Shown here: piece by piece, positions 11,831 to 53,879 of the stretch
Layout: every line of letters begins with the position of its first letter
Position numbering within the stretch: the first letter of the stretch is position 1
NCBI RefSeq assembly: GCF_036365525.1
Contig: NC_090404.1
Span: 1,798,001 to 1,862,000 of the forward strand
DNA: 64,000 nucleotides
Source: Heterodontus francisci
Lineage: Eukaryota
Direction: 5' to 3'
Notes under the pieces: generated by a model
The model's database searches: none
What the model was told of the DNA's origin: nothing
The model's input: the letters and a program-made list of their open reading frames with translations, nothing else
Position numbers and translations under genes: made by a program

Positions 11831-12238
11831 GTCTCCCTTAGTTTCATCCCCCCCCCTTCACACCACAGCATATTTCATTTCACATTTTGGTTTTTATTGA
11901 TTTAGTTTCAAACAAAAACTTTTACATCAGTGAAAAACTTGTTAAAAGAAAGCTGCAGGCAGTAATCCCTCCCATTCCCCTCCCCTGCTCCCATCCTCCT
12001 CCTCTCCCCCATTTCCCTCCCCACTCCTCTCTCCCTCCCCCTCTCCCCTCCACCCCTTTCTCTCTTAATCTCCCCCAGTCCATCTGAAGTTTCATCTGCC
12101 AGAATGAGCTGTTGCTGTGCAGTCGCTGAACATTTCCCAGATGCGCAATGGAAAGGTCCCATTCCCAAATATCACGGGGACACTTCTGGACAATTCACAT
12201 CTTGACAGGTCTGAATGTGAGCAGCGTGCATCAGCTGG

Positions 12239-12250
12239 TCATTGCTGAAC
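12239..12250 (-). CDS. IgW: Probable TM2 exon coding part (VQQ*); 3'UTR runs to AATAAA at 11893-11898
   Basis: ctgtctgtattacag|GTT CAG CAA TGA, phase 0; first unique-sequence acceptor past the 41-bp array, followed by a poly(A) signal about 340 nt later. Confidence 0.7.
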   Translation of the reverse strand, partial: VQQ

Positions 12251-12314
12251 CTGTAATACAGACAGCAGAGTAAGATGCTTGTGTGTGCCACAGTAGAACA
12301 GGTAGTGTAACCGT

Positions 12315-15300
12315 AAAGGACAAGTGACGTGACCCTATTCTGGGAGAGGGACCCACAAGGACAGGCAGTCTGACCCTATTCTTGGAGACGGACCCGAAAG
12401 AACAGGCAGTCTGACCCAATTCTAGGAGAGGGACCCTAAAGGTAAGGCAATCTGACCCTATTCTTGGAGATGGACCCTAAAGGACAGGCAGTCTGACCCT
12501 ATACGGCCGATGGACCCGAAAGGACAGGCAGTCTGACCCTATTCTGGGAGATGGACGCTAAAGGATAGGCAGTCTGACCCTATTCTGGGAGAGGGACCCA
12601 CAAGGACAGGCATTCTGACCCTATTCTGGGAGATGGATGCTAAAGGACAGGCAGTCTGATCCTATTCTGGGAGATGGACCCTAAAGGACAGGCAGTCTGA
12701 TCCTATTCTGGGAGATGGACCCGAAAGGACAGGCAGTCTGACCCTATTCTTGGAGAGGGACCCCAAAGGACAGGCAGTCTGACCCTAATCTTGGAGAGGG
12801 ACCCCAAAGGACAGGCAGTCTGACCCTATATGGCCGATGGACCCTAAAGAACAGGCTGTCTGACCCTATTCTGGGAGATGGACCCTAAAGGACAGGCAGT
12901 CTGACCCTATTCTTGGAGAGGGATCCTGAAGGACAGGGAGTCTGACCCTATTCTGGGAGAGGGATCCTAAAGGACAGGCAGTCTGACCCTATATGGCCGA
13001 TGGACCCTAAAGAACAGGCTGTCTGACCCTATTCTGGGAGATGGACCCTAAAGGACAGGCAGTCTGACCCTATTCTTGGAGAGGGATCCTGAAGGACAGG
13101 GAGTCTGACCCTATTCTGGGAGAGGGATCCTAAAGGACAGGCAGTCTGACCCTATTCTTGGAGAGGGATCCTGAAGGACAGGGAGTCTGACCCTATTCTG
13201 GGAGAGGGATCCTAAAGGACAGGCAGTCTGACCCTATTCTTGGAGAGGGATCCTGAAGGACAGGGAGTCTGACCCTATTCTGGGAGAGGGATCCTAAAGG
13301 ACAGGCAGTCTGACCCTATTCTTGGAGATGGACACGAATGGACAGGCAGTCTGACCCTATTGTTGGAGAGGGACCCTAAAGGACAGGCAGTCTGACCCTA
13401 TTCTTGGAGAGGGACCCTAAAGGACAGGCAGTCTGACCCTTTTGTTGGAGATGGACCCTAAAGGACAGGCAGTCTGACCCTATTCTTGGAGATGGACCCT
13501 AAAGGACAGGCAGTCTGACCCTATTCTTGGAGAGGGACCCTAAAGGACAGGCAGTCTGACCCTTTTGTTGGAGATGGACCCAAAAGGACAGGCAGTCTGA
13601 CCCTATTCTTGGAGAGGGACCCTAAAGGACAGGCAGTCTGACCCTTTTGTTGGAGATGGACCCAAAAGGACAGGCAGTCTGACCCTATTCTTGGAGAGGG
13701 ACCCTAAAGGACAGGCAGTCTGACCCTTTTGTTGGAGATGGACCCTAAAGGACAGGCAGTCTGACCCTTTTGTTGGAGATGGACCCTAAAGGACAGGCAG
13801 TCTGACCCTATTCTTGGAGATGAACCCTAAAGGACAGGCAGTCTGACCCTATTCTTGGAGAGGGACCCTAAAGGACAGGCAGTCTGACCCTTTTGTTGGA
13901 GATGGACCCTAAAGGACAGGCAGTCTGACCCTATTCTTGGAGAGGGACCCTAAAGGACAGGCAGTCTGACCCTTTTGTTGGAGATGGACCCGAAAGGACA
14001 GGCAGTCTGACCCTATTCTGGGAGAGGGACCCTAAAGGACAGGCAGTCTGATCCTATTCTGGGAGATGGACCCGAAAGGACAGGCAGTCTGACCCTATTC
14101 TTGGAGAGGGACCCCAAAGGACAGGCAGTCTGACCCTAATCTTGGAGAGGGACCCCAAAGGACAGGCAGTCTGACCCTATATGGCCGATGGACCCTAAAG
14201 GACAGGCTGTCTGACCCTATTCTGGGAGATGGACCCTAAAGGACAGGCAGTCTGACCCTGTTCTTGGAGAGGGATCCTGAAGGACAGGGAGTCTGACCCT
14301 ATTCTGGGAGAGGGATCCTAAAGGACAGGCAGTCTGACCCTATTCTTGGAGAGGGATCCTGAAGGACAGGGAGTCTGACCCTATTCTGGGAGAGGGATCC
14401 TAAAGGACAGGCAGTCTGACCCTATTCTTGGAGAGGGATCCTGAAGGACAGGGAGTCTGACCCTATTCTGGGAGAGGGATCCTAAAGGACAGGCAGTCTG
14501 ACCCTATTCTTGGAGATGGACACGAATGGACAGGCAGTCTGACCCTATTGTTGGAGAGGGACCCTAAAGGACAGGCAGTCTGACCCTATTCTTGGAGAGG
14601 GACCCTAAAGGACAGGCAGTCTGACCCTTTTGTTGGAGATGGACCCTAAAGGACAGGCAGTCTGACCCTATTCTTGGAGATGGACCCTAAAGGACAGGCA
14701 GTCTGACCCTATTCTTGGAGAGGGACCCTAAAGGACAGGCAGTCTGACCCTTTTGTTGGAGATGGACCCTAAAGGACAGGCAGTCTGACCCTATTCTTGG
14801 AGAGGGACCCTAAAGGACAGGCAGTCTGACCCTTTTGTTGGAGATGGACCCTAAAGGACAGGCAGTCTGACCCTATTCTTGGAGAGGGACCCTAAAGGAC
14901 AGGCAGTCTGACCCTTTTGTTGGAGATGGACCCTAAAGGACAGGCAGTCTGACCATTTTGTTGGAGATGGACCCTAAAGGACAGGCAGTCTGACCCTATT
15001 CTTGGAGATGAACCCTAAAGGACAGGCAGTCTGACCCTATTCTTGGAGAGGGACCCTAAAGGACAGGCAGTCTGACCCTTTTGTTGGAGATGGACCCTAA
15101 AGGACAGGCAGTCTGACCCTATTCTTGGAGAGGGACCCTAAAGGACAGGCAGTCTGACCCTATTCTTGGAGATGGACCCTAAAGGACAGGCAGTCTGACC
15201 CTATTCTGGGAGAGGGACCCTAAAGGACAGGCAGTCTGACCCTATTCTGGGAGATGGACCCTGAAGGACAGGCAGTCTGACCCTATTATTGGAGAGGGAT

Positions 15301-16560
15301 CCTAAAGGACAGGCAGACTGACCCTATTCTTGGAGATGGACCCTAAAGGACAGGCATTCTGACCCTATTCTGGGAGATGGACCCTAAAGGACAGGCATTC
15401 TGACCCTATTCTGGGAGATGGACCCTAAAGGTCAGGCAGTCTGACCCTATTCTGGGAGATGGACCCGAAAGGACAGGCAGTCTGACCCTATTCTGGGAGA
15501 TGGACCCGAAAGGACAGGCAGTCTGACCCTATTCTGGGAGATGGACCCTAAAGGACAGGCAGTCTGACCCTATTCTGGGAGATGGACCCGAAAGGACAGG
15601 CAGTCTGACCCTATTCTGGGAGATGGACCCGAAAGGACAGGCAGTCAGACCCTATTCTTGGAGAGGGACTTGAAAGAACAGGCTGTCTGACCCTATTCTG
15701 GGAGATGGACCTGAAAGGACAGGCAGTCTGACCCTAGTCTTGGAGATGGACCCTAAAGGACAGGCAGTCTGACCCTATTCTTGGAAATGGACCCTAAAGG
15801 ACAGGCAGTCTGACCCTAGTCTTGGAGATGGACCCTAAAGGACAGGCAGTCTGACCCTATTCTTGGAGATGGACCCTAAAGGACAGGCAGTCTGACCCTA
15901 TTCTGGGAGATGGACCCTAAAGGACAGGCAGTCTGACTCTATTCTGGGAAATGGACCCTAAAGGACAGGCAGTCTGACCCTTTATGGCTGATGGACCCTA
16001 AAGGAAAGGCAGTCTGATCCTATTCTGGGAGATGGACCCTAAAGGATAGGCAGTCTGACCCTATTCTGGGAGATGGACCCTAAAGGACAGGCAGTCTGAC
16101 CCTATATGGCTGATGGACCCTAAAGGACAGGCAGTCTGACCCTTTATGGCTGATGGACCCTAAAGGAAAGGCAGTCTGATCCTATTCTGGGAGATGGACC
16201 CTAAAGGAAAGGCAGTCTGATCCTATTCTGGGAGATGGACCCTAAAGGATAGGCAGTCTGACCCTATTCTGGGAGATGGACCCTAGAGGAAAGGCAGTCT
16301 GACACTATTCTGGAGATGGATCCTAAAGGAACGGCAGTCTGACTCTGTTCCGGGAGATGGACCCTAAAAGACATGCCATGTGACCTTATTCAGTGAGATG
16401 GGCACTGAAGGATAAATGTTCTGTTCTTATTCTTGAAGTTGGGTCTGAAAGGACAAGTATTCTGTCCTTATGCTGGGTGTATAAAGGACAGGTGATCTGA
16501 CCTTATTCTGGGAGATGGACCCTAAAGAGTGGCGGTCTGACCTTCTGTGGTGCATCCAGG
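12315..16560. repeat. 41-bp minisatellite (aaaggacaggcagtctgaccctattcttggagatggaccct)n, about 100 units, in the TM1-TM2 intron
   Basis: Direct periodicity; variant units recur at an offset of about 1.19 kb (13331/14520, 13821/15009). Confidence 0.96.
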
Positions 16561-16760: not shown

Positions 16761-16894
16761 CTTGACAACAGTAACAAAGGTACTGTAGAGGAAACTTAGA
16801 ATAAACAGAATGGCAAAGGCAGCGACTGTTAGCACGTTGTCGTCTCCATCCCAATCTCCCGCTTCTTCCTTCCCTTCCAGGTCTGAAAGGTTAT
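16761..16894 (-). CDS. IgW: TM1 exon (DNLSDLEGKEEAGDWDGDDNVLTVAAFAILFILSFLYSTFVTVVK)
   Basis: ctttcag| phase-1 acceptor, AAG|GTAACC donor; acidic spacer plus antigen-receptor TM (CART) motif F..SF.YST.VT. Confidence 0.95.
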
Positions 16895-18607: not shown

Positions 18608-18760
18608 TTTATTGAAATTGGATCAGTACATTAACAAATTACTAATACATTTAACCCTTCATGGGGTCCCATACAAGTTTCACACTTGCTCAAACACAGC
18701 ACAAGAAGGTTTCAAAAAGAACTCTGGACATTCAGACATTTGGAGAAAAGGATGTTTATT
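18608..18760 (-). terminator. Poly(A) signals for the long secretory form
   Basis: AATAAA on the minus strand at 18755-18760 and 18608-18613, downstream of the CH8 stop. Confidence 0.65.
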
Positions 18761-18902: not shown

Positions 18903-19285
18903 TTATGAACAGGATTTAAAGCTATCAGTTAGAACAAGTGAGACATTGACCAAGGTGGGTTTGTTATGAGATTTATTGATGCTTCTGAACAAACTGGTTG
19001 TGACTGACTCGTGTCCCACCACACAGGAATAAGTGGTTCCGCTGTTCCACTCCTCTGCAGAGACTGTCAACTGACTGCCTGAGTTCCAGCCACTTCTGCC
19101 ATCCTCGGTCACTGGCTGGTTCACAAACCCTGACTTCAGAAGCGTGTCATTGGCCATCCAGGCCAGGTAGATCTCTGCGGGGGAGAATCCGGTGACCAGA
19201 CAAACCAGGGTTGCCGTCTGATCCGTCTCCATCTCATGTGGTGAAGGGGGGAGGAGGTAGACTTGAGGATGAGTCTGAACATCAA
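18903..19285 (-). CDS. IgW: CH8 exon with secretory tailpiece (...SINKSHNKPTLVNVSLVLTDSFKSCS*)
   Basis: tttccag| acceptor; PQVYLLPPS...TLVCLVTGFSP...YSCVVGHE; IgM-like tailpiece with NVS sequon and penultimate Cys. Confidence 0.95.
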
Positions 19286-20415: not shown

Positions 20416-20736
20416 CTTGAGCTTTCCTGATTGACCTCTTCTCCGGCGTTGGCAAACTCTTGTCCTCCACCAAACACAAATACTCAACCCCACTCTCCCA
20501 CTCTGCAGCAGGGACCGTCAGTCTGCTGAAGATCACGTCTTTATCTCCAATCCTCTCGGGACCCTGAGTCTTCACTCCATCTTCTCTCTCACTTCCATCC
20601 ACCTGCCAGGTTACCCTGACCCCCTCTAAATCACCATGAAGTACCTCACAAAGAATTGTCGCCATCCTGTTCCTCCAGATCTCTTCAAAAAGAGGCTTGC
20701 TTAAGATGACCGAGATCCCAGTGTCCAAACATTCAT
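20416..20736 (-). CDS. IgW: CH7 exon (DECLDTGISVILSKPLFEEIW...ILCEV...YLCLVEDKSLPTPEKRSIRKAQ)
   Basis: ctcccag| acceptor, G|GTACGT donor, 321 nt; C1-set domain with an extra N-terminal Cys. Confidence 0.92.
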
Positions 20737-21703: not shown

Positions 21704-22021
21704 CTTGGACATTGTTCACCTCCTTGCTGGTTTTGTAGTTGGAGGGTGGATGAGACACTGTGCAGTTGAAGATTGAACCCTTCCTCCACTCCTCTGTACT
21801 CACAGTTAGGTAGTGACTGACACTGAACGTTCCCACCTGCTCCAGAGCAGTGAGTCCAGCGCGGGTGTTGGAGGAGAGCGGAGTACCGTCTTTCTCCCAG
21901 AAGACGTGTATGAGGTCTGGGTAGAATCCAGTGATCACACACTCGAGTGTGACTGTGCTCTTTCTTTTGGTCTCTTGGGCTGGTGGAGGCAGCAGTCTGA
22001 CAATGGGACTTTTTGGCTCGA
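21704..22021 (-). CDS. IgW: CH6 exon (paralogue of CH4)
   Basis: attccag| acceptor, G|GTAGGA donor, 318 nt; VEPKSPIVRLLPPPAQETKRKSTVTLECVITGFYP...FNCTVSHP. Confidence 0.92.
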
Positions 22022-22110: not shown

Positions 22111-22413
22111 CTTTTTCACTGCTTATCCGTTTTGACACAGTTGAGGATGAGGAAGCATGTTGGGCAGAGCACTCAAACTCGACCCCGCTGTCCCACTCCT
22201 CCACGCTGGTTTGAAGTTGGCTGATGACCATCTGTAGGGTCCCTTCCTCTGTCGGTCGCTGAGTCTTAACCCCATCACTTCTCTTCTTCCTGCTCACCTC
22301 CCAGGAGATCTGAACATGGCTGGGATCAGAACAGAGCACTGCACACTCCAGGGTAGCAGTCTTGTTGATCCAAACCTCTTCCATCGAAGGATTTTGGATA
22401 AAGACAGACATTT
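22111..22413 (-). CDS. IgW: CH5 exon (paralogue of CH3)
   Basis: ttctcag| acceptor, G|GTGGGC donor, 303 nt; 25 of 101 aa differ from CH3 (hand count). Confidence 0.92.
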
Positions 22414-23269: not shown

Positions 23270-24920
23270 TGCATCATCCACCCTTGTTTTTTGTTTCACC
23301 ATATTATCTGTCTCCTTCGTCATCCAACGAACCCTAGCTTTTGTTCCCCTGCTTTTCCCACTTGTTGGAATGTACCCAACCTATACCTGAAATATCTCTT
23401 CCTTAAAGATCATCCTTTGTTTCGTTACAGTTTTTCCTGTCAAACTTTGGTTCCATTTTACCCTGGCTGGATCCCCTCTCATCCCATTCAAGTTAGCCCT
23501 CTTCCAATTTAGAAGTTTTACTTTCGATTGTTCTTTGCTCTTCTCCATTATTAATCTAAACCTTATGATACGATGATCACTCATCCCCAAGTGTTCTCCC
23601 ACAGACACTTTGTCCACTTGGCCCATCTCATTCCTCAGCACTAAATCCAGCCTGGTTGGACAAAAACATACTGGTCAAGGAAATTCTCCTGAACACATTT
23701 CAGAAATTCCTCCTGCTCCTTTCCCTTTACTCTAACATGATCCCAATCAATATTTGGGTAATCAAAGCCCCCCAGTATCACCACTCTATTGTTCTTGCAC
23801 ATTTCTGTGATTTTCCTGCAGATTTGCTCCTCTGTCTCTCTCTCACAATTCGGAGGCCAATAGAATCCCCTCCCCAGTAGTGTGATCATACACTTTTAGC
23901 TTCTCAAATCTAAACAAATGGATTCCGTCCTTGCCCACTCAAGGACATCCTCTCCTTTCAACACTACAATATCTTCCCTAAACAGTGCTGTCACACCATC
24001 TTCCTTTTTTCCTTCCTTATCTTTTCTGAGCACTTTCTATCCTTGACGATTCAATGTCTAGTCGCAACATTTTTAAGCCACGTTTCTGTTATTACCACGA
24101 CATCATATTCCCACATGGCTATTTGCACGTGTAGTTTATCTTCCCTATTCACCACACTTTGTGCGTTACATACATGTTTTCTAAACCTGTCTTTGTATTC
24201 TTCATCTTCCTTTTTTTTGGTCTGCTTCTATCTGATGTCGTACTACTTCCTTCTCGAGCACTATCCAAGACTCCCACTCCTTTATGTACATTATTTTTCT
24301 TTTCTACTTTGATATGCAGGTGTGCAGGCCCCTTCCAATTTAGTTTAAACCCTTCCCAATGACACCAGTGAACCTCCCTGTGATGACATTGGTCCAGTCC
24401 TCTTTGGATGTAACCCGTCCCTTTTGAACAGATGCCTCCTGCCCGTGAACTGGTCCCAAAGCCCCAAGAATCTGAAGCCCTTCTTCCTGCATTCTGCCTC
24501 AAGCCACACATTGATCTTCCCTCCCTTCATATTTCTACTCTCACTGGCGCATGACTCTGGGCGTAATCCAGCGATTACTACCTTCGAGGTCTTACTTTGT
24601 AAACTTCCTCTCTAATTCCTGAATGTCTGACCATAGGACCTCAATACCTTCCCTCTCTATGTTGCTGATACCGACATGCAGCACAGCTTCTGCCACACTC
24701 CCCTCCCACTGCAGACTATTCTGCACTTTCTCTGTGATGTCCTTTACCCTGGCACCAGGGAGGCAACAAACCATGCAGGACTCATGATGAAGGTTACAGA
24801 AATGCCTGTCTGACCCCCTAACTATGGAATCTCCTAAAGCAACTGTATTTCTATGCTTTGCTGTTCTTCCCTGTGCAGTTCCTTGCCCACTGCTGCCATC
24901 GTCTGGACTACACTCATTCA
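23270..24920 (-). mobile_element. CR1 fragment (ORF1 esterase to ORF2 endonuclease)
   Basis: GDSIVRG, CCLPGARVKDI, DGLHP, GGFDYPNIDW and SDH motifs. Confidence 0.8.
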
Positions 24921-25469: not shown

Positions 25470-28400
25470 TGTCTGAAGTCAATGATTTGTAAACCTAGGT
25501 TTCATATACACTCTCTATTGTCAATGATTTGTAAACCTAGGTTTCATATCCACTGCATATTGTCAATGATTTGTAAACCTAGGTTTCATATCCACTCTCT
25601 ATTGTCAATGATTTGTAAACCTCGGTTTCATATACACTCTCTATTGTCAATGATTTGTAAACCTAGGTTTCGTATACACTCTCTATTGTCAATGATTTGT
25701 AAACCTAGGTTTCATATCCACTCTCTATTGTCAATGATTTGTAAACCTAGGTTTCATATCCACTGCATATTGTCAATGATTTGTAAACCTAGGTTTCATA
25801 TACACTCTCTATTGTCAATGATTTGTAAACCTAGGTTTCATATCCACTGTATATTGTCAATGATTTGTAAACCTAGGTTTCATATACACTCTCTATTGTC
25901 AATGATTTGTAAACCTAGGTTTCATATCCACTGTATATTGTCAATGATTTGTAAACCTAGGTTTCATATACACTCTCTATTGTCAATGATTTGTAAACCT
26001 AGGTTTCATATACACTCTCTATTGTCAATGATTTGTAAACCTAGGTTTCATATACACTCTCTATTGTCAATGATTTGTAAACCTAGGTTTCATATACACT
26101 CTCTATTGTCAATGATTTGTAAACCTAGGTTTCATATACACTCTCTATTGTCAATGATTTGTAAACCTAGGTTTCATATACACTCTCTATTGTCAATGAT
26201 TTGTAAACCTAGGTTTCATATCCACTGTATATTGTCAATGATTTGTAAACCTAGGTTTCATATACACTCTCTATTGTCAATGATTTGTAAACCTAGGTTT
26301 CATATACACTCTCTATTGTCAATGATTTGTAAACCTAGGTTTCATATACACTCTCTATTGTCAATGATTTGTAAACCTAGGTTTCATATCCACTGTATAT
26401 TGTCAATGATTTGTAAACCTAGGTTTCATATACACTCTCTATTGTCAATGATTTGTAAACCTAGGTTTCATATCCACTGTAAATTGTCAATGATTTGTAA
26501 ACCTAGGTTTCATATCCACTGTATATTGTCAATGATTTGTTAACCTAGGTTTCATATACACTCTCTATTGTCAATGATTTGTAAACCTAGGTTTCATATA
26601 CACTCTCTATTGTCAATGATTTGTAAACCTAGGTTTCATATCCACTCTCTATTGTCAATGATTTGTAAACCTAGGTTTCATATACACTCTCTATTGTCAA
26701 TGATTTGTAAACCTAGGTTTCATATCCACTCTCTATTGTCAATGATTTGTAAACCTAGGTTTCATATCCACTGTAAATTGTCAATGATTTGTAAACCTAG
26801 GTTTCATATCCACTGTATATTGTCAATGATTTGTAAACCTAGGTTTCATATCCACTGTATATTGTCAATGATTTGTAAACCTAGGTTTCATATCCACTGT
26901 ATATTGTCAATGATTTGTAAACCTAGTTTCATATCCACTGTATATTGTCAATGATTTGTAAACCTAGGTTTCATATCCACTGTATATTGTCAATGATTTG
27001 TAAACCTAGGTTTCATATACACTCTCTATTGTCAATGATTTGTAAACCTAGGTTTCATATCCACTGTATATTGTCAATGATTTGTAAACCTAGGTTTCAT
27101 ATACACTCTCTATTGTCAATGATTTGTAAACCTAGGTTTCATATCCACTGTATATTGTCAATGATTTGTAAACCTAGGTTTCATATCCACTGTATATTGT
27201 CAATGATTTGTAAACCTAGGTTTCATATACACTGTATATTGTCAATGATTTGTAAACCTAGGTTTCATATCCACTGTATATTGTCAATGATTTGTAAACC
27301 TAGGTTTCATATCCACTGTATATTGTCAATGATTTGTAAACCTAGGTTTCATATACACTCTCTATTGTCAATGATTTGTAAACCTAGGTTTCATATACAC
27401 TCTCTATTGTCAATGATTTGTAAACCCAGGTTTCATATACACTCTCTATTGTCAATGATTTGTAAACCTAGGTTTCATATACACTCTCTATTGTCAATGA
27501 TTTGTAAACCTAGGTTTCATATCCACTGTATATTGTCAATGATTTGTAAACCTAGGTTTCATATACACTCTCTATTGTCAATGATTTGTAAACCTAGGTT
27601 TCATATACACTCTCTATTGTCAATGATTTGTAAACCTAGGTTTCATATACACTCTCTATTGTCAATGATTTGTAAACCTAGGTTTCATATCCACTGTATA
27701 TTGTCAATGATTTGTAAACCTAGGTTTCATATACACTCTCTATTGTCAATGATTTGTAAACCTAGGTTTCATATCCACTGTAAATTGTCAATGATTTGTA
27801 AACCTAGGTTTCATATCCACTGTATATTGTCAATGATTTGTTAACCTAGGTTTCATATACACTCTCTATTGTCAATGATTTGTAAACCTAGGTTTCATAT
27901 ACACTCTCTATTGTCAATGATTTGTAAACCTAGGTTTCATATCCACTCTCTATTGTCAATGATTTGTAAACCTAGGTTTCATATACACTCTCTATTGTCA
28001 ATGATTTGGAAACCTAGGTTTCATATCCACTGTAAATTGTCAATGATTTGTAAACCTAGGTTTCATATCCACTGTATATTGTCAATGATTTGTTAACCTA
28101 GGTTTCATATACACTGTATATTGTCAATGATTTGTAAACCTAGGTTTCATATCCACTGTATATTGTCAATGATTTGTAAACCTAGGTTTCATATCCACTG
28201 TATATTGTCAATGATTTGTAAACCTAGTTTCATATCCACTGTATATTGTCAATGATTTGTAAACCTAGGTTTCATATCCACTGTATATTGTCAATGATTT
28301 GTAAACCTAGGTTTCATATACACTCTCTATTGTCAATGATTTGTAAACCTAGGTTTCATATCCACTGTATATTGTCAATGATTTGTAAACCTAGGTTTCA

Positions 28401-30670
28401 TATACACTCTCTATTGTCAATGATTTGTAAACCTAGGTTTCATATCCACTGTATATTGTCAATGATTTGTAAACCTAGGTTTCATATCCACTGTATATTG
28501 TCAATGATTTGTAAACCTAGGTTTCATATACACTGTATATTGTCAATGATTTGTAAACCTAGGTTTCATATCCACTGTATATTGTCAATGATTTGTAAAC
28601 CTAGGTTTCATATCCACTGTATATTGTCAATGATTTGTAAACCTAGGTTTCATATACACTCTCTATTGTCAATGATTTGTAAACCTAGGTTTCATATCCA
28701 CTGTATATTGTCAATGATTTGTAAACCTAGGTTTCATATACACTCTCTATTGTCAATGATTTGTAAACCTAGGTTTCATATACACTCTCTATTGTCAATG
28801 ATTTGTAAACCTAGGTTTCATATACACTCTCTATTGTCAATGATTTGTAAACCTAGGTTTCATATCCACTGTATATTGTCAATGATTTGTAAACCTAGGT
28901 TTCATATACACTCTCTATTGTCAATGATTTGTAAACCTAGGTTTCATATCCACTCTCTATTGTCAATGATTTGTAAACCTAGGTTTCATATACACTCTCT
29001 ATTGTCAATGATTTGTAAACCTAGGTTTCATATACACTCTCTATTGTCAATGATTTGTAAACCTAGGTTTCATATCCACTGTAAATTGTCAATGATTTGT
29101 AAACCTAGGTTTCATATCCACTGTATATTGTCAATGATTTGTAAACCTAGGTTTCATGTACACTGTATATTGTCAATGATTTGTAAACCTAGGTTTCATA
29201 TCCACTGTATATTGTCAATGATTTGTAAACCTAGGTTTCATATCCACTGTATATTGTCAATGATTTGTAAACCTAGGTTTCATATCCACTGTATATTGTC
29301 AATGATTTGTAAACCTAGTTTCATATCCACTGTATATTGTCAATGATTTGTAAACCTAGGTTTCATATCCACTGTATATTGTCAATGATTTGTAAACCTA
29401 GGTTTCATATCCACTGTATATTGTCAATGATTTGTAAAGCTAGGTTTCATATACACTCTCTATTGTCAATGATTTGTAAACCTAGGTTTCATATCCACTG
29501 TATATTGTCAATGATTTGTAAACCTAGGTTTCATATACACTCTCTATTGTCAATGATTTGTAAACCTAGGTTTCATATCCACTGTATATTGTCAATGATT
29601 TGTAAACCTAGGTTTCATATCCACTGTATATTGTCAATGATTTGTAAACCTAGGTTTCATATACACTGTATATTGTCAATGATTTGTAAACCTAGGTTTC
29701 ATATCCACTGTATATTGTCAATGATTTGTAAACCTAGGTTTCATATCCACTGTATATTGTCAATGATTTGTAAACCTAGGTTTCATATACACTGTATATT
29801 GTCAATGATTTGTAAACCTAGGTTTCATATACACTCTCTATTGTCAATGATTTGTAAACCTAGGTTTCATATCCACTGTATATTGTCAATGATTTGTAAA
29901 CCTAGGTTTCATATCCACTGTATATTGTCAATGATTTGTAAACCTAGGTTTCATATCCACTTGATATTGTCAATGATTTGTAAACCTAGGTTTCATATAC
30001 ACTCTCTATTGTCAATGATTTGTAAACCTAGGTTTCATATCCACTGTATATTGTCAATGATTTGTAAACCTAGGTTTCATATCCACTGTATATTGTCAAT
30101 GATTTGTAAACCTAGGTTTCATATACACTCTCTATTGTCAATGATTTGTAAACCTAGGTTTCATATACACTCTCTATTGTCAATGATTGGTAAACCTAGG
30201 TTTCATATCCACTGTATATTGTCAATGATTTGTAAACCTAGGTTTCATATACACTGCATATTGTCAATGATTTGTAAACCTAGGTTTCATATACACTGTA
30301 TATTGTCAATGATTTGTAAACCTAGGTTTCATATCCACTGTATATTGTCAATGATTTGTAAACCTAGGTTTCATATACATCGGATATAGTCAAGAATGGT
30401 AAACCTGGATTTAATATACACCATAAGTAGTCACTAATTTGTAAATCTAGGTTTAATATACACTGTGTGTGGTCAATGATTTGTAAACCTTGGTTTAGTA
30501 TACACTGTCTATATTCAGTTATCTGTAAACCAAGGTTTAGTATACACAATGTCTAGTCAATGATTTGTAAACCTCGGTTTAATGTACACCATATATGGTA
30601 AATAATTTTAAAAACCTAGGTTTGATATACACTATGTAGGTTTCATATACACTGTGTATAATCAATAATT
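25470..30670. repeat. 42-bp minisatellite (gtcaatgatttgtaaacctaggtttcatat(a/c)cact(ctc/gta)tatt)n, about 120 units, in the Sec2-CH5 intron
   Basis: Direct periodicity; palindrome AAACCTAGGTTT in each unit; variants recur at 1301 bp. Confidence 0.97.
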
Positions 30671-31312: not shown

Positions 31313-32440
31313 TTGTCAGCTTCGGAGGGAGTTGAAGGTTTAAGGTAGTCGATGGGGTGCCAATCAAGAGGGCTGCTTTGTCCTGGATGGTTTCGACCAT
31401 CTTGCGTGTTGTTGGAGCTGCACCCAACCAGGCAAGTGGAGAGTTTCCATCACTCTCCTGACTTGTGCCTTGTCGATGGTGGACAGACATTGGGGATACA
31501 GGAGGTGAGTTACCTGCTGCAGAATTCTCAGCCTCTGCCCTGCTCTTGTAGCCACAGCATTTATGTGGCTGGTCCAGTTCAGTGTTTGGTCAATGGGGCC
31601 CCCAGGATGTTGATAGTGGGGGAATTGAGCAATGGTAATGCCATTGAACGTCAAGGAGAGATGGCTAGATTCTCTCTTGTTTGAGATGGTCATTGCCTGG
31701 CACTTGTGTGGCGTGAATGTTACTTGCCACTTATTAGTCCAAGCCTGGGTGTTGTCCAGGTCTTGATGCATATGGACACGAGCTGCTTCAGTATCTGAGG
31801 AGTCACGAATGGTGCTGAACATTGTGCAATAATCAGTGAATATCCCCACTTCTGACCTTATGCTGGGGACAAGGTCATTGATGAAAAAGTTGAAGATGGT
31901 GGGGCCTAGGACACTACCCTGAGGAACTCCTGCAGTGATGTCCTGGGAATGAGATGACTGGCCTCCAACAATCACAACCATTTTCCTTTGTGCTAGGTAT
32001 GACTCCAACCAACAGAGACTTTCCCCCCTGATTACCATTGTCTCCACTCCTTGATGCTATACTCAGTTAAAAGCTGCCTTGATATCAGGGGCAATCGCTC
32101 TCATCCTCACCTCTAGAGTTCAGCTCTTTTGTCCACGCTTGGATCAAATCTATAATGAGGTCAGCAGCTGAGTGGCTCTGGCAGAACCCAAACAGAGCGT
32201 CAGTGAGGAGGTTATTCCTGAGCAAGTGCCGTCCGATAGCACCGTCAACGACCCGTTCCATCACTTTGCTGGTGATCGGGAGTAGACTGATAGGGTGCTA
32301 ATTGGCCAGGTTGGATTTGTCCTGCTTTTTGTGCACAGGACGTGGAAGGATTTGAACCCATTTCCCCAGGGCATTAGCCTGGGGCTCTGGTTTACTAATC
32401 TAGTGATATTCTACTACGCTGCCACCACCTCCCCCTGCTG
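31313..32440 (-). mobile_element. LINE family B RT fragment
   Basis: [10 protein letters not shown]; homologous to 7676-8260. Confidence 0.8.
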
Positions 32441-32954: not shown

Positions 32955-33127
32955 TCACTTTATTTTGCACGCTTGTTGGTGACAGTTATATTGGAGCTGA
33001 CCTCCATTTTCAAGGGTCACATTAAGGTCAGTCTGGTAAACAAGCTTTGGCATACACCCAGAACAAGAGGAAGGAGGACAAGTGCAGGGAGTGTTTCCAC
33101 CCGGAACAGGAAGATTTACATTTCCAC
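32955..33127 (-). CDS. IgW: Secretory exon Sec2, 57-aa Cys-rich tail (GGNVNLPVPGGNTPCTCPPSSCSGCMPKLVYQTDLNVTLENGGQLQYNCHQQACKIK*)
   Basis: attccag| acceptor in phase 1 with CH4; 5 nt differences from Sec1 over 173 nt; 6 Cys; AATAAA in the last codons and at 32501-32506. Confidence 0.87.
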
Positions 33128-34093: not shown

Positions 34094-34405
34094 CTTCAAT
34101 GTTCTTCACCTCCTTGCTGGTTTTGTAGTTGGAAGGTGGATGAGACACTGTACAGGTGAAGCTTGAACCTTTCGTCCACTCCTCTGTACTCACAGTCAGG
34201 TAGTGAGTGACACTGAATGTTCCCTCCTGTTCCAGAGCGGTGAGTCCAGCGCGGGTGTTGGATGTGATCGGAGCACCGTCTTTCTCCCAGGAGACGTGTA
34301 TGAGGTCCGGGTAGAATCCAGTGATCACACACTCAAGGGTGGCCGTGCTCTCATTCTTGGTCTCTGGTGGAGGCAGTAATCTGACCATGGGACTTTTTGG
34401 CTTGG
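34094..34405 (-). CDS. IgW: CH4 exon
   Basis: gttccag| acceptor, G|GTAGGA donor, 312 nt; ATLECVITGFYP...W...FTCTVSHP; 89-nt intron from CH3. Confidence 0.93.
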
Positions 34406-34494: not shown

Positions 34495-34797
34495 CTTTTA
34501 CATTCTTTACCCGTTTTGACACAGGTGAGGACGAGGAAGCACTTTGGGCAGAGCACACAAATTCCACTCCGCTGCCCCACTCCTCCGCACTGGTTCGGAG
34601 TTGGCTGATGATGATGTATTGAGTCCCTTCCTCTGTTGGGCGCTGAGTCGTAACCCCTTCACTTCTCTTCTTCCTATTCACATTCCAGGAGATTTGGACC
34701 TTGCTCGGATCAGAACAGACCACTGTACACACCAGGGTAGCAGTCTTGTTGATCCAAACCTCTTCAATAGAAGGCTTTTGAATAAAGAGAGACATTT
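34495..34797 (-). CDS. IgW: CH3 exon
   Basis: ttcctag| acceptor, G|GTGGGC donor, 303 nt; EMSLFIQKPSIEEVW...LVCTVVC...W...FVCSAQ. Confidence 0.92.
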
Positions 34798-38220: not shown

Positions 38221-38393
38221 TCACTTTATTTTGCACGCTTGTTGGTGACAGTTATATTGGAGCTGGCCTCCATTTTCAAGGGTCACATTAAGGTCAGTCT
38301 GGTAAACAAGCTTCGGCATACACCCAGAACAAGAGCAAGGAGGACAAGTGCAGGGAGTGTTTCCACCCGGAACAGGAAGATTTACGGTTCCAC
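38221..38393 (-). CDS. IgW: Secretory exon Sec1, 57-aa Cys-rich tail (GGTVNLPVPGGNTPCTCPPCSCSGCMPKLVYQTDLNVTLENGGQLQYNCHQQACKIK*)
   Basis: atttcag| acceptor in phase 1 with CH2; 7 Cys, NVT sequon, TGA at 38221-38223; AATAAA overlaps the last codons, another at 37754-37759. A Cys-rich tail is the known hallmark of IgW-short. Confidence 0.88.
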
Positions 38394-39179: not shown

Positions 39180-39479
39180 CCTTTTGGTACCTCATGCTGA
39201 TCCTGTCATTGAATCTGGAACCTGCGTGAGACACTTCACAGGTGTAGACATCCCCTGTGGTCCATTCCACCACAGGCACTGTCAGGTAAGAGACCGTTTC
39301 AAAGGTAGAGTCATTTCTCTGTTTGGAATGGAGAACAACACCTGATTGATCCACTCTGTCTTTCTTCCAGGAAACCTGTACACTGTCAGGAGAGTATCCG
39401 GATATCACACAGCCCAGGACGGCAGTAGTTTGATTGTAGACAACCTCCGGGGATGGAACAAGGGGAATGAGGTTTGGAG
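39180..39479 (-). CDS. IgW: CH2 exon ([31 protein letters not shown]...[22 protein letters not shown])
   Basis: tctcaag| acceptor, G|GTAAGT donor, 300 nt; C1-set motifs. Confidence 0.92.
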
Positions 39480-41135: not shown

Positions 41136-41171
41136 TTATCTGAACCACTGACTCAATGGGAGGAGTGCTCT

Positions 41172-41336: not shown

Positions 41337-41529
41337 GTGCGATTTCTCATCGTCCTTTATTTTATTACCAGCATCACCGCCAGCGTACAGGGATAGAATA
41401 TACGGGCACAAGAATTTGTGCGGGTCTATTGTGTAGCAACCTCCTACATTGGTTGGTGAAGGTTCCCTTGTCTAATTTCATCCCCCAACACCAATGCAGT
41501 TTTAAATGGTAAAAATGTCTCATACTAAC

Positions 41530-41844
41530 ATTTTGGTTTTTTGATCTGGCGTTCCACCATTTCGTCTGGCTTGTACCCTGCCTTGCAGTGGTAGACCTTA
41601 TTGGAATTCCAGTCTGACGCAGAGACTTTGAGCACACTGCTCATCGTGTATTTCGTATTTTTCCCCAAGACTGCCGGATACTTCTTGATTCCAGTGGAAA
41701 TGACCCCATTGTCACGGGACCATGTCTGACTGATGCTCTCGGGCTGAAAGTCCTTGACCAGGCAGAGGAGGCTTATCTCATCTTGGTTGGAGCTTGTGCC
41801 ACAGGAGGGGCTGGAGATGTAGACCGATGGTACAGACTGGGTAA
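41530..41844 (-). CDS. IgW: CH1 exon (VTQSVPSVYISSPSCGTSSNQDEISLLCLVKDFQPESISQTW...DWNSNKVYHCKAGYKPDEMVERQIKKPK)
   Basis: tttcag| acceptor, T|GTTAGT donor, 315 nt open. C1-set Cys/Trp/Cys plus an N-terminal Cys at the light-chain-linking position. Confidence 0.93.
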
Positions 41845-50770: not shown

Positions 50771-51437
50771 ACAATCAAATACAATCTTATTCCACATGCA
50801 GCCTGTTTCCTGTCTGTACAGACAGCTCACTGGTTTATGCTGCAAGCTTGTTAGGATGAGGCATTTTTAATAAACACAATCCCTATTCTCACTCTGTGCA
50901 AACTATTTTGTCTCCATCAGCACTGAAGTATCAAGTGAAACATATAACTTACTTTTCTATCCAAAAGCTGTTCCAACAATAGCTTTAACCAACTTTAAAA
51001 AAAACTGCACCAAATATAAAACAACAAACAACTGGATGATGTGTTTTTACTAAATCTTGACCTGCTTGTAAACGTCCAAAAGTCCAAAATGACCAAACCT
51101 GCCCCAACAGAGCAAGTGTCCTGAAAACTAGAATCTGGATCCAGCAGAACATATTAAACATATCCTGGAATCTTTATTCGATTCTGATAATCGATTCTGT
51201 GGGGTTAAATCTTAACCCTTGACAGTACATCCAGTTATCAGATTCCAGCTCCAATTACTGGGAATATTCCTGACTCTAAAGAAATCCACCTGTCTCAGAT
51301 AGAATCATATAATTGTTCTAAATCTCTCACTGGTTTCAGGTGAATCATACATCACACTTGAATTAGTGAACTCACGAATAACACAAATTAAAGAAAATAA
51401 ATGTTAGCTAAGGAAGGGATTGAGAAGTTTGTCTTAC

Positions 51438-51485
51438 CTGAAGTCACGGTCAGAAAGGTTCCGCTGCCCCAGTAGTCAAGATAGT
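51438..51485 (-). CDS. IgW: JH segment (YLDYWGSGTFLTVTS)
   Basis: WGxG motif; phase-1 donor CAG|GTAAGA; preceded by an RSS. Confidence 0.95.
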
Positions 51486-51524
51486 CACTGTGCTTTGTTT
51501 CCTCATTCACCCAATGCAGTAACT
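51486..51524 (-). promoter_or_regulatory. J 5' RSS, 23-bp spacer, degenerate nonamer
   Basis: Plus strand cactgtg (51486-51492) + 23 nt + gcagtaact (51516-51524). Confidence 0.8.
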
Positions 51525-51861
51525 GAACTTGCCCACAATGTGGAAAAATCACAGGGTAACATCAATATAAAAGTTGTTTTAATCTGGAGCAGCAGCTTCC
51601 TGTAATTTAATCTGAAATTCCATCTGAAACCTGTTCCAAGTGTATCAATAAGTGAGGTATTTTTGCAGTTTTTCAGTCTGCTGATACCAGCTCCTGCTGT
51701 CCCTGAGAAACAGAATCTCCTCCTTTTTGCCTTTTATTTTCCCAGAAATCAACATTTTCCTCCAACAATCTGAGGCAGTGTTTAGATATTTAACTCTGGG
51801 AGGCAGGAATGCTGAATCCATGGACACAGGCTCTGATATACATAGTCATTTGTAACGGGGG

Positions 51862-51925
51862 AGTTTGTGTCAAGCTCTGTACTGCTGTGGTCCATATCAC
51901 ACTGCTTCACCCCAGGTCATAAACC
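51862..51925 (-). other. DH segment D2 (coding 51890-51897, ATATGGAC) flanked by two 12-RSS
   Basis: Plus strand: agtttgtgt-12-tgctgtg [gtccatat] cacactg-12-tcataaacc. A 12/12 D is needed to bridge the 23-RSS of D1 and of J. Confidence 0.85.
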
Positions 51926-52254
51926 ACGGGCATAAGATCCAGCCCGAAACAAAATGTACCAAACATCTGGCCAGTAGTTTTATTAACTCCTCAGTCTGTA
52001 TCCCTGTGTCCCCCACACATCAGGTGTCAAACTCGGAGTTTTCAGGACTTCATTTATAATCCACAAGGAGTTCTCATTGTTATTGGTCCCAGAGCTGTTA
52101 CTCGCTGCATTTCCCTCTTTCAATTAATATCTTCAAAGCAAGTTGTTCACACACCTGGATTATTGAATCAGGATCTGATTTATATCCACTGGACATGAGG
52201 TAAAAGCCGGTGATATCATCTGAAGAGTCCAGTTTAAATAGCTTTCATGTGGCA

Positions 52255-52335
52255 GGTTTTTGAATGGAGGGAGCCCCCATCTCTCACACTGTGCCACCCA
52301 GTATAGACACTGTGATAGACACCTGTACATTAACC
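52255..52335 (-). other. DH segment D1b (coding 52294-52307, identical to D1a) with 5' 12-RSS and 3' 23-RSS
   Basis: Same heptamers, nonamers, 23-spacer and coding sequence as D1a at a 701-bp offset; the 12-spacer differs at 3 positions. Confidence 0.9.
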
Positions 52336-52955
52336 TCCTCCCCTTTCACTGTCACTGAGCCCCGTCACTTCACATTGAAACCACACTGACACTGCTACAA
52401 GTGAGCAATCCTGCTCTCTGATTCACACTCCAGGTGGTTTGGAAAGCTGTGTTTCAGTGGTTCTGTTACTGAGCAGTGATTCAATAATCCAGGAAACCCT
52501 GAGTTCAATCCCTCTTTGGGTGTTTGGGAATTGCACTTTAAAAATCTGGGAAAATAAAGCTGGGATGAGTAAAAGTGACCACGAAGTTATTAGGTTGTCA
52601 GAAAAACCCAACTGGTTCACTAATGTCCATGATAGAAGGACATCCGGTATGGCCTCTCGGTGACTCCAGTCTCACACCCAATGTGGTTGACTCCTGAAGG
52701 GGTCTAATGAGGCCCTCAGTTATCGCTGTCTTCTCAGGGTAACTAGGAATGGGGAACAAATCCAGTCTTGTCAGTGACATCTTCATCCCAGAGCTGTTAC
52801 TCGGCACTGTTTCCCCTTTTTCAACTAATATCTTCAAAGAAAGTTGTTCACACACCCGGATTATTGAATCAGGATCTGATTTATATCCACTGGACATGAG
52901 GTAAAAGCCGGTGATATCATCTGAAGAGTCCAGTTCAAATAGCTTTCATGTGGCA

Positions 52956-53036
52956 GGTTTTTGAATGGAGGGAGCCCCCATCTCTCACACTGTGCCACCC
53001 AGTATAGACACTGTGATACACACCCGGACATTAACC
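52956..53036 (-). other. DH segment D1a (coding 52995-53008, TCTATACTGGGTGG) with 5' 12-RSS and 3' 23-RSS
   Basis: Plus strand: ggtttttga-23-cactgtg [ccacccagtataga] cactgtg-12-acattaacc. Open in all three frames (SILG/LYWV/YTGW). Confidence 0.9.
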
Positions 53037-53379
53037 TCCTCCCCTTTCACTGTCACTGAGCCCAGTCACTTCACATTGAAACCACACTGACACTGCTACA
53101 AGTGAGCAATCCTGCTCTCAGATTCACACTCCAGATGGTTTGGGAGGCAGTGTTTCAGTTAATATTGATATTTTTTAGATGTGTCCCGAGGTCCAGTTTC
53201 GGGTTGGACCCCAGGTTTCCCATCGCATCTCCATCCCAGGAATTCCCAGATGATAAACAAGTCTCCCAATTCCAGAGGCCGCAGATCCCAACACAACAAG
53301 GATGGGAATGAAGCTGTGCTGGAACTGAGGGTGAGAGATTGTTTCCTCCCCTTTCACTCATTGCCCTGAGTGCAGACTG

Positions 53380-53418
53380 AGTTTTTGTACCAGTCCAGCC
53401 CCGGTTCCTCTCACTGTG
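53380..53418 (-). promoter_or_regulatory. V 3' recombination signal sequence, 23-bp spacer
   Basis: CACAGTG (53412-53418) + 23 nt + ACAAAAACT (53380-53388). Confidence 0.96.
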
Positions 53419-53713
53419 CTCGCACAGTAATACATGGCGGTGTCCTCAACTCTCAGATTATTCAGTTGTAGATAGGCGGTGTTGCCGCTCTTGGAAACTT
53501 CGAATCGGCCTTGAACTCCAGATGCGTAATACTTGCTACCAGAAGAAGCTATAACCGCGACCCACTGCAGCCCTTTCCCGGGGACCTGTTTCACCCAGTG
53601 CATGCTGTTGCTGCTGAGGCTGAACCCACTCACTCCACAGGACAATTTGTGAGACTCCCCGGGCTTTTTCACAGCTGACTCGGGCTGGGTCAACACGATA
53701 TTGGACCGGACAC
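53419..53713 (-). CDS. IgW: Germline VH segment ([26 protein letters not shown]...[12 protein letters not shown]...EDTAMYYCA)
   Basis: Acceptor ttaacag|GT; canonical Cys, Trp and YYC; open frame; immediately followed by an RSS. Confidence 0.96.
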
Positions 53714-53833
53714 CTGTTAATAAAAGAGAAAAAGAAGAGTTCACTTTAATAAACCCGTTGTATAAACAGAGGGTTAAAGAGTCTGCGAATAAGCAGCCGC
53801 ACTGTGAGGGAATAAAGCTGCGGGACCACTCAC

Positions 53834-53879
53834 CGGTTAGACAGGCCAGAAGGACACAGAGATAAGGAGCAATCCCCAT
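53834..53879 (-). CDS. IgW: IgW leader exon ([16 protein letters not shown])
   Basis: ATG at 53879, hydrophobic signal peptide, phase-1 donor G|GTGAGT; 120-nt intron to the V exon. Confidence 0.93.

What the first reader, a model, noticed from the sequence alone, without database searches (positions are those of the whole stretch)
11875..53879. Complete 8-CH IgW cluster that works as an isoform switchboard (2C, 4C and 8C secreted forms plus TM forms)
Seen: J and CH1-CH7 all end in phase 1, and every CH exon, Sec1, Sec2 and TM1 begins in phase 1, so any upstream donor can join any downstream acceptor in frame. Three secretory ends are encoded: after CH2, after CH4, and on CH8. Established: nurse shark IgW clusters have 6-8 C exons and two interspersed secretory exons. 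Inference: this cluster is functional and yields 2C-Sec1, 4C-Sec2, 8C, exon-skipped 6C and several TM isoforms. The Sec, D, J and TM2 pieces would probably be missed by automated annotation.
Basis: partly seen in the sequence, partly recalled or inferred. Interest (0 to 1): 0.8.

Follow-up and report, generated by a model that had tools for sequence, protein, structure and literature searches.

The report
Intact horn shark IgW antibody gene
This is a complete, unrearranged shark IgW (IgD-like) antibody heavy-chain gene with eight constant exons, three alternative secreted endings and a membrane ending; it is a well-built example of a gene layout already described in nurse shark, not a new system.

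Summary
On the minus strand lie a leader, V, three D segments, J, eight C1-set constant exons, two near-identical Cys-rich terminal secretory exons (after CH2 and CH4), a mu-like tailpiece on CH8, and TM1/TM2. Every Ig-type boundary is phase 1.

One exception: the CH1 donor ends in T, so CH1 to CH3 or CH5 would create a TAA stop.

Named relatives show it is IgW, almost certainly from Heterodontus:
- CH2 is 85/87 identical and Sec1 55/56 identical to horn shark IgW secreted-form cDNA proteins. Those proteins read straight across the predicted CH2-Sec junction.
- TM1 plus TM2 match the horn shark IgW transmembrane cDNA protein exactly, 48 of its 49 residues. Its leading E fits only the end of CH4.

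So the 2C-secreted and 4C-membrane forms are documented for this species. The 4C-Sec2, 6C and 8C forms rest on nurse shark literature.

Phase-1 symmetry is universal for Ig-domain exons, so the "switchboard" is the ordinary Ig rule applied to a layout published in 2013. This is a new member of a known kind, of modest interest.

The parts
53834..53879 (-). Leader exon ([15 protein letters not shown] + G), donor ACCG|gtgagt, ends in phase 1
   Evidence: no canonical octamer within 420 nt upstream, TATA-like TATTTAAA about 75 nt upstream of the ATG
53419..53713 (-). V exon ([12 protein letters not shown]...TAMYYCA-), open, Pfam V-set
53380..53418 (-). V RSS: CACAGTG - 23 nt - ACAAAAACT
52995..53008 (-). 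D1 core TCTATACTGGGTGG, flanked by a 12-RSS (GGTTAATGT-12-CACAGTG) and a 23-RSS (CACAGTG-23-TCAAAAACC)
52294..52307 (-). D2, core and RSSs identical to D1, in a duplicate about 700 bp downstream
51890..51897 (-). D3 core ATATGGAC, 12-RSS on both sides with imperfect heptamers (CAGTGTG / CACAGCA)
51438..51485 (-). J (YLDYWGSGTFLTVTS), heptamer CACAGTG at 51492-51486, weak nonamer AGTTACTGC at 23 nt spacing, donor CAG|gtaaga in phase 1
   Evidence: nonamer read by eye
41530..41844 (-). CH1 (315 nt), carries the N-terminal Cys expected for the light-chain bond; donor AAAAT|gttagt whose last base is T
39180..39479 (-). CH2 (300 nt), 85/87 identical to horn shark IgW P83742
38221..38393 (-). Sec1: terminal secretory exon, 56 aa Cys-rich tail (7 Cys, CPPCSCSGC) plus stop; AATAAA at 38230-38225 overlaps the last codons; GT-rich stretch just downstream
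34495..34797 (-). CH3 (303 nt)
34094..34405 (-). CH4 (312 nt), ends ...KNIE|G; the only exon whose end fits the E-D start of the TM cDNA protein
32955..33127 (-). Sec2: second terminal secretory exon, 54/56 identical to Sec1 (6 Cys, CPPSSCSGC); AATAAA at 32964-32959
22111..22413 (-). CH5 (303 nt), paralogue of CH3 (75/100 aa)
21704..22021 (-). CH6 (318 nt), paralogue of CH4 (86/105 aa)
20416..20736 (-). CH7 (321 nt); its C-terminal end resembles the sawfish IgW model XP_051882954 (19/31)
18903..19285 (-). CH8 with mu-like secretory tailpiece NKPTLVNVSLVLTDSFKSCS and stop; AATAAA at 18760 and 18613
16761..16894 (-). TM1 (acidic spacer plus membrane helix ...LTVAAFAILFILSFLYSTFVTVVK), phase-1 acceptor, phase-0 donor AAG|gtaacc; 44/44 identical to horn shark P83978
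11875..12250 (-). TM2: acceptor tattacag|GTT CAG CAA TGA (VQQ-stop, 12250-12239) plus 3' UTR to the AATAAA at 11898-11893
   Evidence: string unique in the window, 0.03 expected by chance

Best explanation
This is a germline (unrearranged), structurally intact IgW (omega, IgD-orthologous) heavy-chain minicluster, most probably of the horn shark Heterodontus francisci or a very close relative.

RAG recombination would join V (23-RSS) through D1, D2 and/or D3 to J under the 12/23 rule. D3 is obligatory because only its 3' RSS has a 12 spacer.

One primary transcript can then end in five ways:
- Splice the CH2 donor to the Sec1 terminal exon and cleave at the AATAAA that overlaps its last codons. 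This gives the short 2C secreted form with a hinge-like Cys-rich tail.
- Skip Sec1, run CH3-CH4 and end on Sec2. This gives the 4C secreted form.
- Skip both Sec exons and run to CH8 with its mu-like tailpiece, giving the 8C form, or a 6C form if one CH pair is skipped.
- Splice a CH donor (CH4, possibly CH2 or others) to TM1-TM2. This gives the membrane receptor.
- Splice the leader directly to CH1, giving V-less forms.

The choice is a competition between splicing to the next CH exon and use of an internal terminal exon with its own poly(A) site. That is the same logic as the mu-s/mu-m choice, repeated at three places.

Shown here: the anatomy, phases, signals and isotype, and that horn shark cDNA-derived proteins carry exactly the CH2-Sec and TM1-TM2 junctions. 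The TM protein's leading E fits a CH4-TM1 junction.

Inferred: use of Sec2 after CH4, the 8C and 6C forms, the regulation, and that this cluster itself is expressed.
For: - Eight C1-set exons and one V-set exon.
- Complete co-oriented inventory with nothing extra.
- All boundaries in phase 1, with best-in-neighbourhood splice signals.
- RSS layout V-23, 12-D1-23, 12-D2-23, 12-D3-12, with a heptamer on J.
- CH2 is 96% identical to 'IgW chain C region, secreted form 2 [Heterodontus francisci]'.
- P83743 and P83742 read ...SMRYQK-G-GT(V/I)NLPVPGG...NCHQQACKIK, which is the predicted CH2->Sec junction with the predicted GGT codon.
- In 1.84 billion representative proteins, the Sec tail finds only IgW short forms from horn shark and sawshark.
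- TM1 is 44/44 identical to P83978, plus the junction D. The protein's C-terminal VQQ equals the unique TM2 candidate.
- The leading E of P83978 fits only the end of CH4.
- Poly(A) signals follow every terminal exon.
- CH3/CH5 and CH4/CH6 have dN/dS of 0.52 and 0.28 at dS of about 0.28, so both copies are constrained.
- Reviews report nurse shark IgW clusters with 6-8 C exons, 2/4/6/8C secreted forms and 2C/4C TM forms.
Against: - There is no transcript evidence for this very cluster.
- The window's CH2 differs from both cDNA proteins (GYSPD versus GFYPD; 85/87 and 73/76), so those cDNAs came from a paralogous cluster or another allele.
- No canonical octamer lies upstream of the leader.
- The J nonamer is weak (5/9) and the D3 heptamers are imperfect (and reading).
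Word searches were blank or exhausted, so their IgW assignment rests on position within the cluster, the CH7 tail match and the literature.
- The dN/dS values rest on few substitutions.
Confidence: 0.9

Rival explanations
1. The cluster is structurally intact but silent or hardly used: a recently duplicated, non-expressed copy among many IgW clusters. The cDNA matches would then come from its paralogues.
For: - The CH2 sequence is not identical to either horn shark cDNA protein.
- There is no octamer, the J nonamer is weak and the D3 heptamers are imperfect.
- Other notes of this scan describe broken or truncated IgW clusters 150-350 kb away (unchecked).
Against: - No stop, frameshift or lost splice site occurs in any of the 15 exons.
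- TM1 and TM2 are identical to the cDNA protein.
- The duplicated exons show purifying selection.
- Runs from one sample hold up to 74% of the words of a mostly intronic 9 kb stretch with only about 150 Mb of contigs. That would fit abundant pre-mRNA, but the run type is only guessed.
Confidence: 0.12
2. The gene works as a 6C cluster. CH5-CH6 (or CH3-CH4) are always skipped, so the 8C form is not a real product and the second exon pair is redundant.
For: - The classical IgW-long has six C domains in all cartilaginous fish studied.
- A 10.5 kb intron stuffed with a 42-bp x 123 minisatellite and LINE fragments separates Sec2 from CH5.
Against: - CH5 and CH6 keep the best local splice sites, open frames and dN/dS below 1 against CH3/CH4.
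- 8C secreted forms are reported for nurse shark.
Confidence: 0.2
3. It is an IgNAR or IgM cluster, or a chimera, mislabelled as IgW.
For: IgNAR C2-C5 are homologous to IgW C3-C6, and CH3-CH8 were not matched to named proteins here.
Against: - CH1, CH2, the Sec tail and TM all match proteins named IgW at 69-100%.
- There are eight C exons rather than four or five.
- CH1 carries the light-chain Cys.
- The V is a conventional VH-like V-set domain with a 23-RSS.
Confidence: 0.01
4. The eight-exon layout is an assembly artefact: a false tandem duplication of Sec-CH3-CH4.
For: The Sec blocks are 97.1% identical over 557 bp.
Against: - The CH3-CH4 and CH5-CH6 blocks are only 85.6% identical over 810 bp, with different intron sizes and contents.
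- There are no N gaps.
Confidence: 0.02

Closest known systems
Nurse shark (Ginglymostoma cirratum) IgW (omega) miniclusters, Zhang, Du Pasquier & Hsu, J Immunol 2013 (PMID 23935192; paper not held, content from reviews PMC4279169 and PMC5192425 and from my memory of the abstract)
   Same: - V-D-J plus 6-8 C exons.
- Two interspersed secretory exons plus a tailpiece on the last C exon.
- Secreted 2C, 4C, 6C and 8C forms and 2C and 4C TM forms made by RNA processing.
   Different: - Different species and order (Heterodontiformes versus Orectolobiformes).
- Whether the 8C duplication is the same event is untested.
- Seen here: the Sec exons are homogenised (97%) while the duplicated CH pairs are old (85.6%).
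- Seen here: three D segments, two of them identical.
Horn shark IgW cDNA-derived proteins P83742 (secreted form 1/3), P83743 (secreted form 2) and P83978 (transmembrane form Tm2T7/Tm7T7/Tm3T3)
   Same: - CH2 is 85/87 and 73/76 identical.
- The Sec tail is 55/56 identical.
- TM1 plus TM2 match 48 of the 49 residues of P83978 exactly.
- The junctions fall where the exon model predicts.
- The Cys/Ser difference between forms 1/3 and 2 mirrors Sec1 versus Sec2.
   Different: - They are short partial proteins.
- Both carry GFYPD in CH2 where the window has GYSPD.
- Form 2 combines the Sec1-type T with the Sec2-type S, so neither secreted cDNA comes from this exact cluster and allele.
Mammalian and teleost IgM/IgD secreted-versus-membrane choice (mu-s/mu-m poly(A) versus splice competition)
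   Same: There is competition between an upstream poly(A) site or terminal exon and splicing to downstream exons. All exons are phase 1. The TM1/TM2 pair has the conserved ...LF.LS..YST.VT..K membrane motif.
   Different: Here two of the three secretory ends are separate internal terminal exons placed between C exons, not only a tailpiece contiguous with the last C exon.
Shark IgNAR clusters
   Same: The C-terminal C domains are homologous to the IgW C3-C6 type, and both use the minicluster organisation with three D segments.
   Different: IgNAR has five C exons and a single-domain V, and it does not pair with light chains. This gene has an IgW CH1 and CH2, the IgW short tail and eight C exons.

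Membership tests
Elasmobranch IgW (omega / IgD-orthologous) heavy-chain minicluster | Self-contained V-D-J-C cluster with RSSs allowing recombination within the cluster | tested here: met
   V-23, 12-D1-23, 12-D2-23, 12-D3-12 and a J heptamer lie within 2.4 kb. The whole gene spans 42 kb.
Elasmobranch IgW (omega / IgD-orthologous) heavy-chain minicluster | CH1-CH2 sequence of IgW type rather than IgM or IgNAR | tested here: met
   CH2 is 85/87 identical to P83742 and 73/76 to P83743. CH1 is 70/102 and CH2 67/98 identical to sawshark 'splenic IgW, short secretory form-like'. No IgM or IgNAR sequence was compared directly.
Elasmobranch IgW (omega / IgD-orthologous) heavy-chain minicluster | Long Cys-rich secretory tail of the 2C short form, encoded after CH2 | tested here: met
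   Sec1 is 55/56 identical to both horn shark secreted forms. An exhaustive HMMER search finds the tail only in IgW short forms.
Elasmobranch IgW (omega / IgD-orthologous) heavy-chain minicluster | Six or more C1-set exons including a duplicated two-exon unit | tested here: met
   There are eight C1-set exons. CH3/CH5 are 75% and CH4/CH6 82% identical in protein (86/105), and the DNA blocks are 85.6% identical.
Elasmobranch IgW (omega / IgD-orthologous) heavy-chain minicluster | IgW-type TM1/TM2 exons | tested here: met
   TM1 is 44/44 identical and the junction D and VQQ also match P83978. TM1 is 34/44 identical to the sawfish IgW TM-like model.
Elasmobranch IgW (omega / IgD-orthologous) heavy-chain minicluster | Rearranged and expressed in lymphoid tissue | not testable with these tools
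Nurse-shark-type omega cluster with interspersed secretory exons (Zhang et al. 2013) | Two secretory exons placed between C exons, plus a tailpiece on the 3'-most C exon | tested here: met
   Sec1 follows CH2, Sec2 follows CH4, and the tailpiece is on CH8. Each has a poly(A) signal.
Nurse-shark-type omega cluster with interspersed secretory exons (Zhang et al. 2013) | Transcripts of 4C-Sec, 6C and 8C types from the same cluster | not tested
   Only the 2C-Sec and TM junctions are documented, through cDNA-derived proteins.
Nurse-shark-type omega cluster with interspersed secretory exons (Zhang et al. 2013) | Orthology of the 8C duplication with the nurse shark 8C clusters | not tested
IgM (mu) cluster | Four C-mu exons with the tailpiece on C-mu4 | tested here: not met
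   There are eight C exons and two internal Sec exons, and CH1, CH2 and TM match proteins named IgW.
IgNAR cluster | Five C exons, single-domain NAR V, no light-chain-pairing CH1 | tested here: not met
   There are eight C exons, an IgW CH1 with the N-terminal Cys, and a VH-like V-set domain.

The most novel reading that the evidence does not exclude
The [Sec - CH - CH] duplication that makes the 8C layout is old (dS about 0.28) and may be shared by horn shark and nurse shark. Both CH pairs have stayed under purifying selection. The two secretory exons are kept almost identical by gene conversion (dS about 0.08) except for one cysteine (7 versus 6 Cys). The 2C and 4C secreted forms would then differ on purpose in disulfide valence and so in polymer state. 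The two horn shark cDNA tail variants (CPPCSCSGC and CPPSSCSGC) would reflect this.
Probability: 0.25. Interest if true: 0.45.

Novelty: new member of a known kind. Interest (0 to 1): 0.3.

Why it matters
- It gives an exon-level, coordinate-exact map of a complete 8C IgW cluster in a second shark order.
- It ties three old partial horn shark cDNA proteins (P83742, P83743, P83978) to their genomic exons and junctions.
- It supplies junction sequences for quantifying IgW isoforms in RNA data. IgW/IgD function is still poorly understood.
- The short pieces (D segments, J, Sec1, Sec2, the 12-nt TM2) are of a kind automated annotation may handle poorly. A sawfish RefSeq model of only 85 aa, made of a C-exon tail plus TM, hints at this.
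- It does not reveal a new mechanism.

Tried and rejected
- **The search for homologous proteins** with CH4 found no candidate in the allowed length range. This is uninformative.
- **PDB searches** with CH1 and CH4 gave only generic Ig heavy-chain hits. They were useful only in showing that CH1 aligns to CH1 positions of other heavy chains.
- **Papers:** Zhang et al. 2013 (PMC3839419 / PMID 23935192) and PMC420240 are not held.
- **Octamer search** upstream of the leader found none. A one-mismatch ATCCAAAT sits 264 nt upstream and is not convincing.
Every search used a single exon or one uninterrupted open stretch.
- **Rejected readings:** IgM or IgNAR identity, assembly duplication, and a germline-joined cluster (all segments still carry RSSs).

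Full report
**What was checked**

The finding claims a complete IgW heavy-chain cluster between 11875 and 53879, with eight C exons, three secretory ends, TM exons and all Ig-type boundaries in phase 1. The gene lies on the minus strand. The window has no N runs.

**Anatomy**

Stop-to-stop open stretches and splice-site listing give this model, in plus-strand coordinates from 5' to 3' of the gene:

| Piece | Coordinates |
|---|---|
| Leader | 53879-53834 |
| V | 53713-53419 |
| D1 | 53008-52995 |
| D2 | 52307-52294 |
| D3 | 51897-51890 |
| J | 51485-51438 |
| CH1 | 41844-41530 |
| CH2 | 39479-39180 |
| Sec1 | 38393-38221 |
| CH3 | 34797-34495 |
| CH4 | 34405-34094 |
| Sec2 | 33127-32955 |
| CH5 | 22413-22111 |
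| CH6 | 22021-21704 |
| CH7 | 20736-20416 |
| CH8 with tailpiece | 19285-18903 |
| TM1 | 16894-16761 |
| TM2 | 12250-12239, with AATAAA at 11898 |

Pfam calls all eight CH exons C1-set and the V exon V-set. A tblastn inventory of the whole window, both strands, finds exactly these pieces and nothing more.

**Phases and splice signals**

The leader, J and CH1-CH7 end after the first base of a codon. V, all CH exons, Sec1, Sec2 and TM1 begin with bases 2-3. CH1-CH7 are all multiples of three in length. TM1 to TM2 is phase 0.

To avoid circularity I scored every AG and GT within 120 nt regardless of phase. Ten of twelve chosen acceptors and all eight donors are the best or tied. The two weaker acceptors, CH2 and TM2, are fixed by protein evidence described below.

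The CH1 donor base is T, so CH1 to CH3 or CH5 makes TAA.

Phase-1 symmetry is the general rule for Ig-superfamily domain exons (established knowledge). The compatibility is real but is not a special adaptation of this gene.

**Recombination signals**

- V carries CACAGTG-23-ACAAAAACT.
- D1 and D2 have identical cores (TCTATACTGGGTGG), each with a 12-RSS 5' and a 23-RSS 3'. They sit in a roughly 700-bp duplication.
- D3 (ATATGGAC) has 12-RSSs on both sides, with imperfect heptamers.
- J has a perfect heptamer on its coding end and only a weak nonamer at 23 nt.

The layout obeys the 12/23 rule and makes D3 obligatory. The cluster is fully unrearranged. I found no canonical octamer upstream of the leader.

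**Isotype and species**

CH2 alone retrieves [quoted passage not shown] at 96% identity. Its cluster mate is "secreted form 1/3".

| Window exon | Named protein | Identity |
|---|---|---|
| CH2 | P83742 | 85/87 |
| CH2 | P83743 | 73/76 |
| Sec1 | P83742 and P83743 | 55/56 each |
| CH1 | sawshark "splenic IgW, short secretory form-like" | 70/102 |
| CH2 | sawshark "splenic IgW, short secretory form-like" | 67/98 |
| TM1 | P83978 "IgW transmembrane form" of horn shark | 44/44 |

An exhaustive HMMER search of 1.84 billion representative proteins with the Sec1 tail finds only IgW short forms, plus one unrelated repeat protein. Other notes of this scan also call the genome horn shark.

**Junction evidence without reads**

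- Both horn shark secreted-form proteins read ...SMRYQK-G-GT(V/I)NLPVPGG...NCHQQACKIK. That is CH2 spliced directly to the Cys-rich exon, with the GGT junction codon the model predicts.
- P83978 reads E-DNLSDLEG...TVVK-VQQ.
- The D is the predicted G+AT junction codon.
- VQQ-stop is what the TM2 candidate encodes. That string is unique in the window, with 0.03 expected by chance.
- The leading E fits only the end of CH4 (...KNIE|G) among all donors. This points to a 4C membrane form, which reviews list as a known TM form.

So 2C-Sec and 4C-TM are documented for the species. The window's CH2 has GYSPD where both cDNA proteins have GFYPD, so those cDNAs came from another cluster or allele.

**Internal duplication**

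- The Sec1 block (38513-37957) and the Sec2 block (33246-32691) are 97.1% identical over 557 bp.
- CH3-CH4 (34866-34064) and CH5-CH6 (22482-21674) are 85.6% identical over 810 bp.
- dN/dS is 0.52 for CH3/CH5 and 0.28 for CH4/CH6 at dS of about 0.28. For the Sec pair dS is 0.08.

Both CH pairs have therefore been constrained since an old duplication. This argues that CH5-CH6 are used, and rules out an assembly artefact. The Sec exons look homogenised later.

**Mechanism**

Each Sec exon is a terminal exon. It has a strong phase-1 acceptor, a 56-codon tail, AATAAA overlapping the last codons (38230 and 32964) and a GT-rich stretch just downstream.

The output then depends on whether the CH2 or CH4 donor pairs with the nearby Sec acceptor and the transcript is cleaved there, or pairs with the next CH exon or TM1. 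CH8 carries a mu-like tailpiece with an NVS site and a penultimate Cys.

Shown here: the anatomy and signals, plus two junction types in species cDNAs. Inferred: the 4C-Sec2, 6C and 8C products, and the regulation.

**Comparison with what is known**

Reviews state that nurse shark has eight IgW clusters with 6-8 C exons, secreted forms with 2, 4, 6 or 8 C domains, TM forms with 2 and 4 C domains, V-less forms, and a long Cys-rich tail on the 2C form.

The statement about two interspersed secretory exons comes from Zhang et al. 2013. That paper is not held, so I cite its abstract from memory. The present cluster is the horn shark counterpart of that layout.

**Limits**

I worked beside them and sent none of their letters to any search tool.
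All queries were single exons or one uninterrupted open stretch.
- Runs X1-X4 hold up to 74% of the words of a mostly intronic 9-kb stretch. That would fit abundant pre-mRNA, but their type is only guessed, so I give it no weight.
- Expression and rearrangement of this particular cluster remain untested.

**Verdict**

The cluster is a new member of a known kind, and I score interest at 0.3.

Noticed in passing
window 38221-38393 and 32955-33127 (-): Sec1 has 7 Cys (CPPCSCSGC) and Sec2 has 6 (CPPSSCSGC). The two horn shark cDNA proteins show the same Cys/Ser alternative (P83742 Cys, P83743 Ser). The CPPC motif resembles an IgG hinge.
   Followed up: partly
window 41366-41530 (-): Read-through of the CH1 donor gives ...KKPK-Cys-stop, and a double AATAAA lies about 165 nt downstream. 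Whether a Fab-like CH1-only transcript exists is unknown.
   Followed up: partly
window 12330-16542: A 41-bp minisatellite of 103 copies (90% matches) fills almost the whole TM1-TM2 intron.
   Followed up: partly
window 25478-30633: A 42-bp AT-rich minisatellite of 123 copies (94% matches) sits in the 10.5 kb Sec2-CH5 intron, next to LINE reverse-transcriptase and endonuclease fragments at 31367-32056 and 23644-23895.
   Followed up: partly
window 52130-53140 (-): A duplication with a period of about 700 bp carries D1 and D2 with identical cores and RSSs.
   Followed up: partly
window 56046-57482 (-) and 59114-60880 (+): Two closely related LINE-type ORFs (RVT_1 plus zf-RVT) lie in inverted orientation upstream of the V gene. 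The plus-strand copy has a 588-aa open frame.
   Followed up: partly
window 11003-11828 and 1-700: Tandem arrays (79-bp unit, about 11 copies at 11003-11828; a similar-looking array at the window start) flank the 3' end of the gene.
   Followed up: no
window 53880-54300 (-): There is no canonical Ig octamer upstream of the leader, only a TATA-like TATTTAAA about 75 nt upstream of the ATG and a one-mismatch ATCCAAAT at 54143.
   Followed up: partly
P0006 (XP_051882954.1, Pristis pectinata): A RefSeq model of only 85 aa joins the tail of a CH7-like exon to TM1-TM2 and ends in VLQ. It suggests that automated annotation fragments IgW clusters, and that the penultimate C exon can be joined to TM1 in a batoid.
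   Followed up: no
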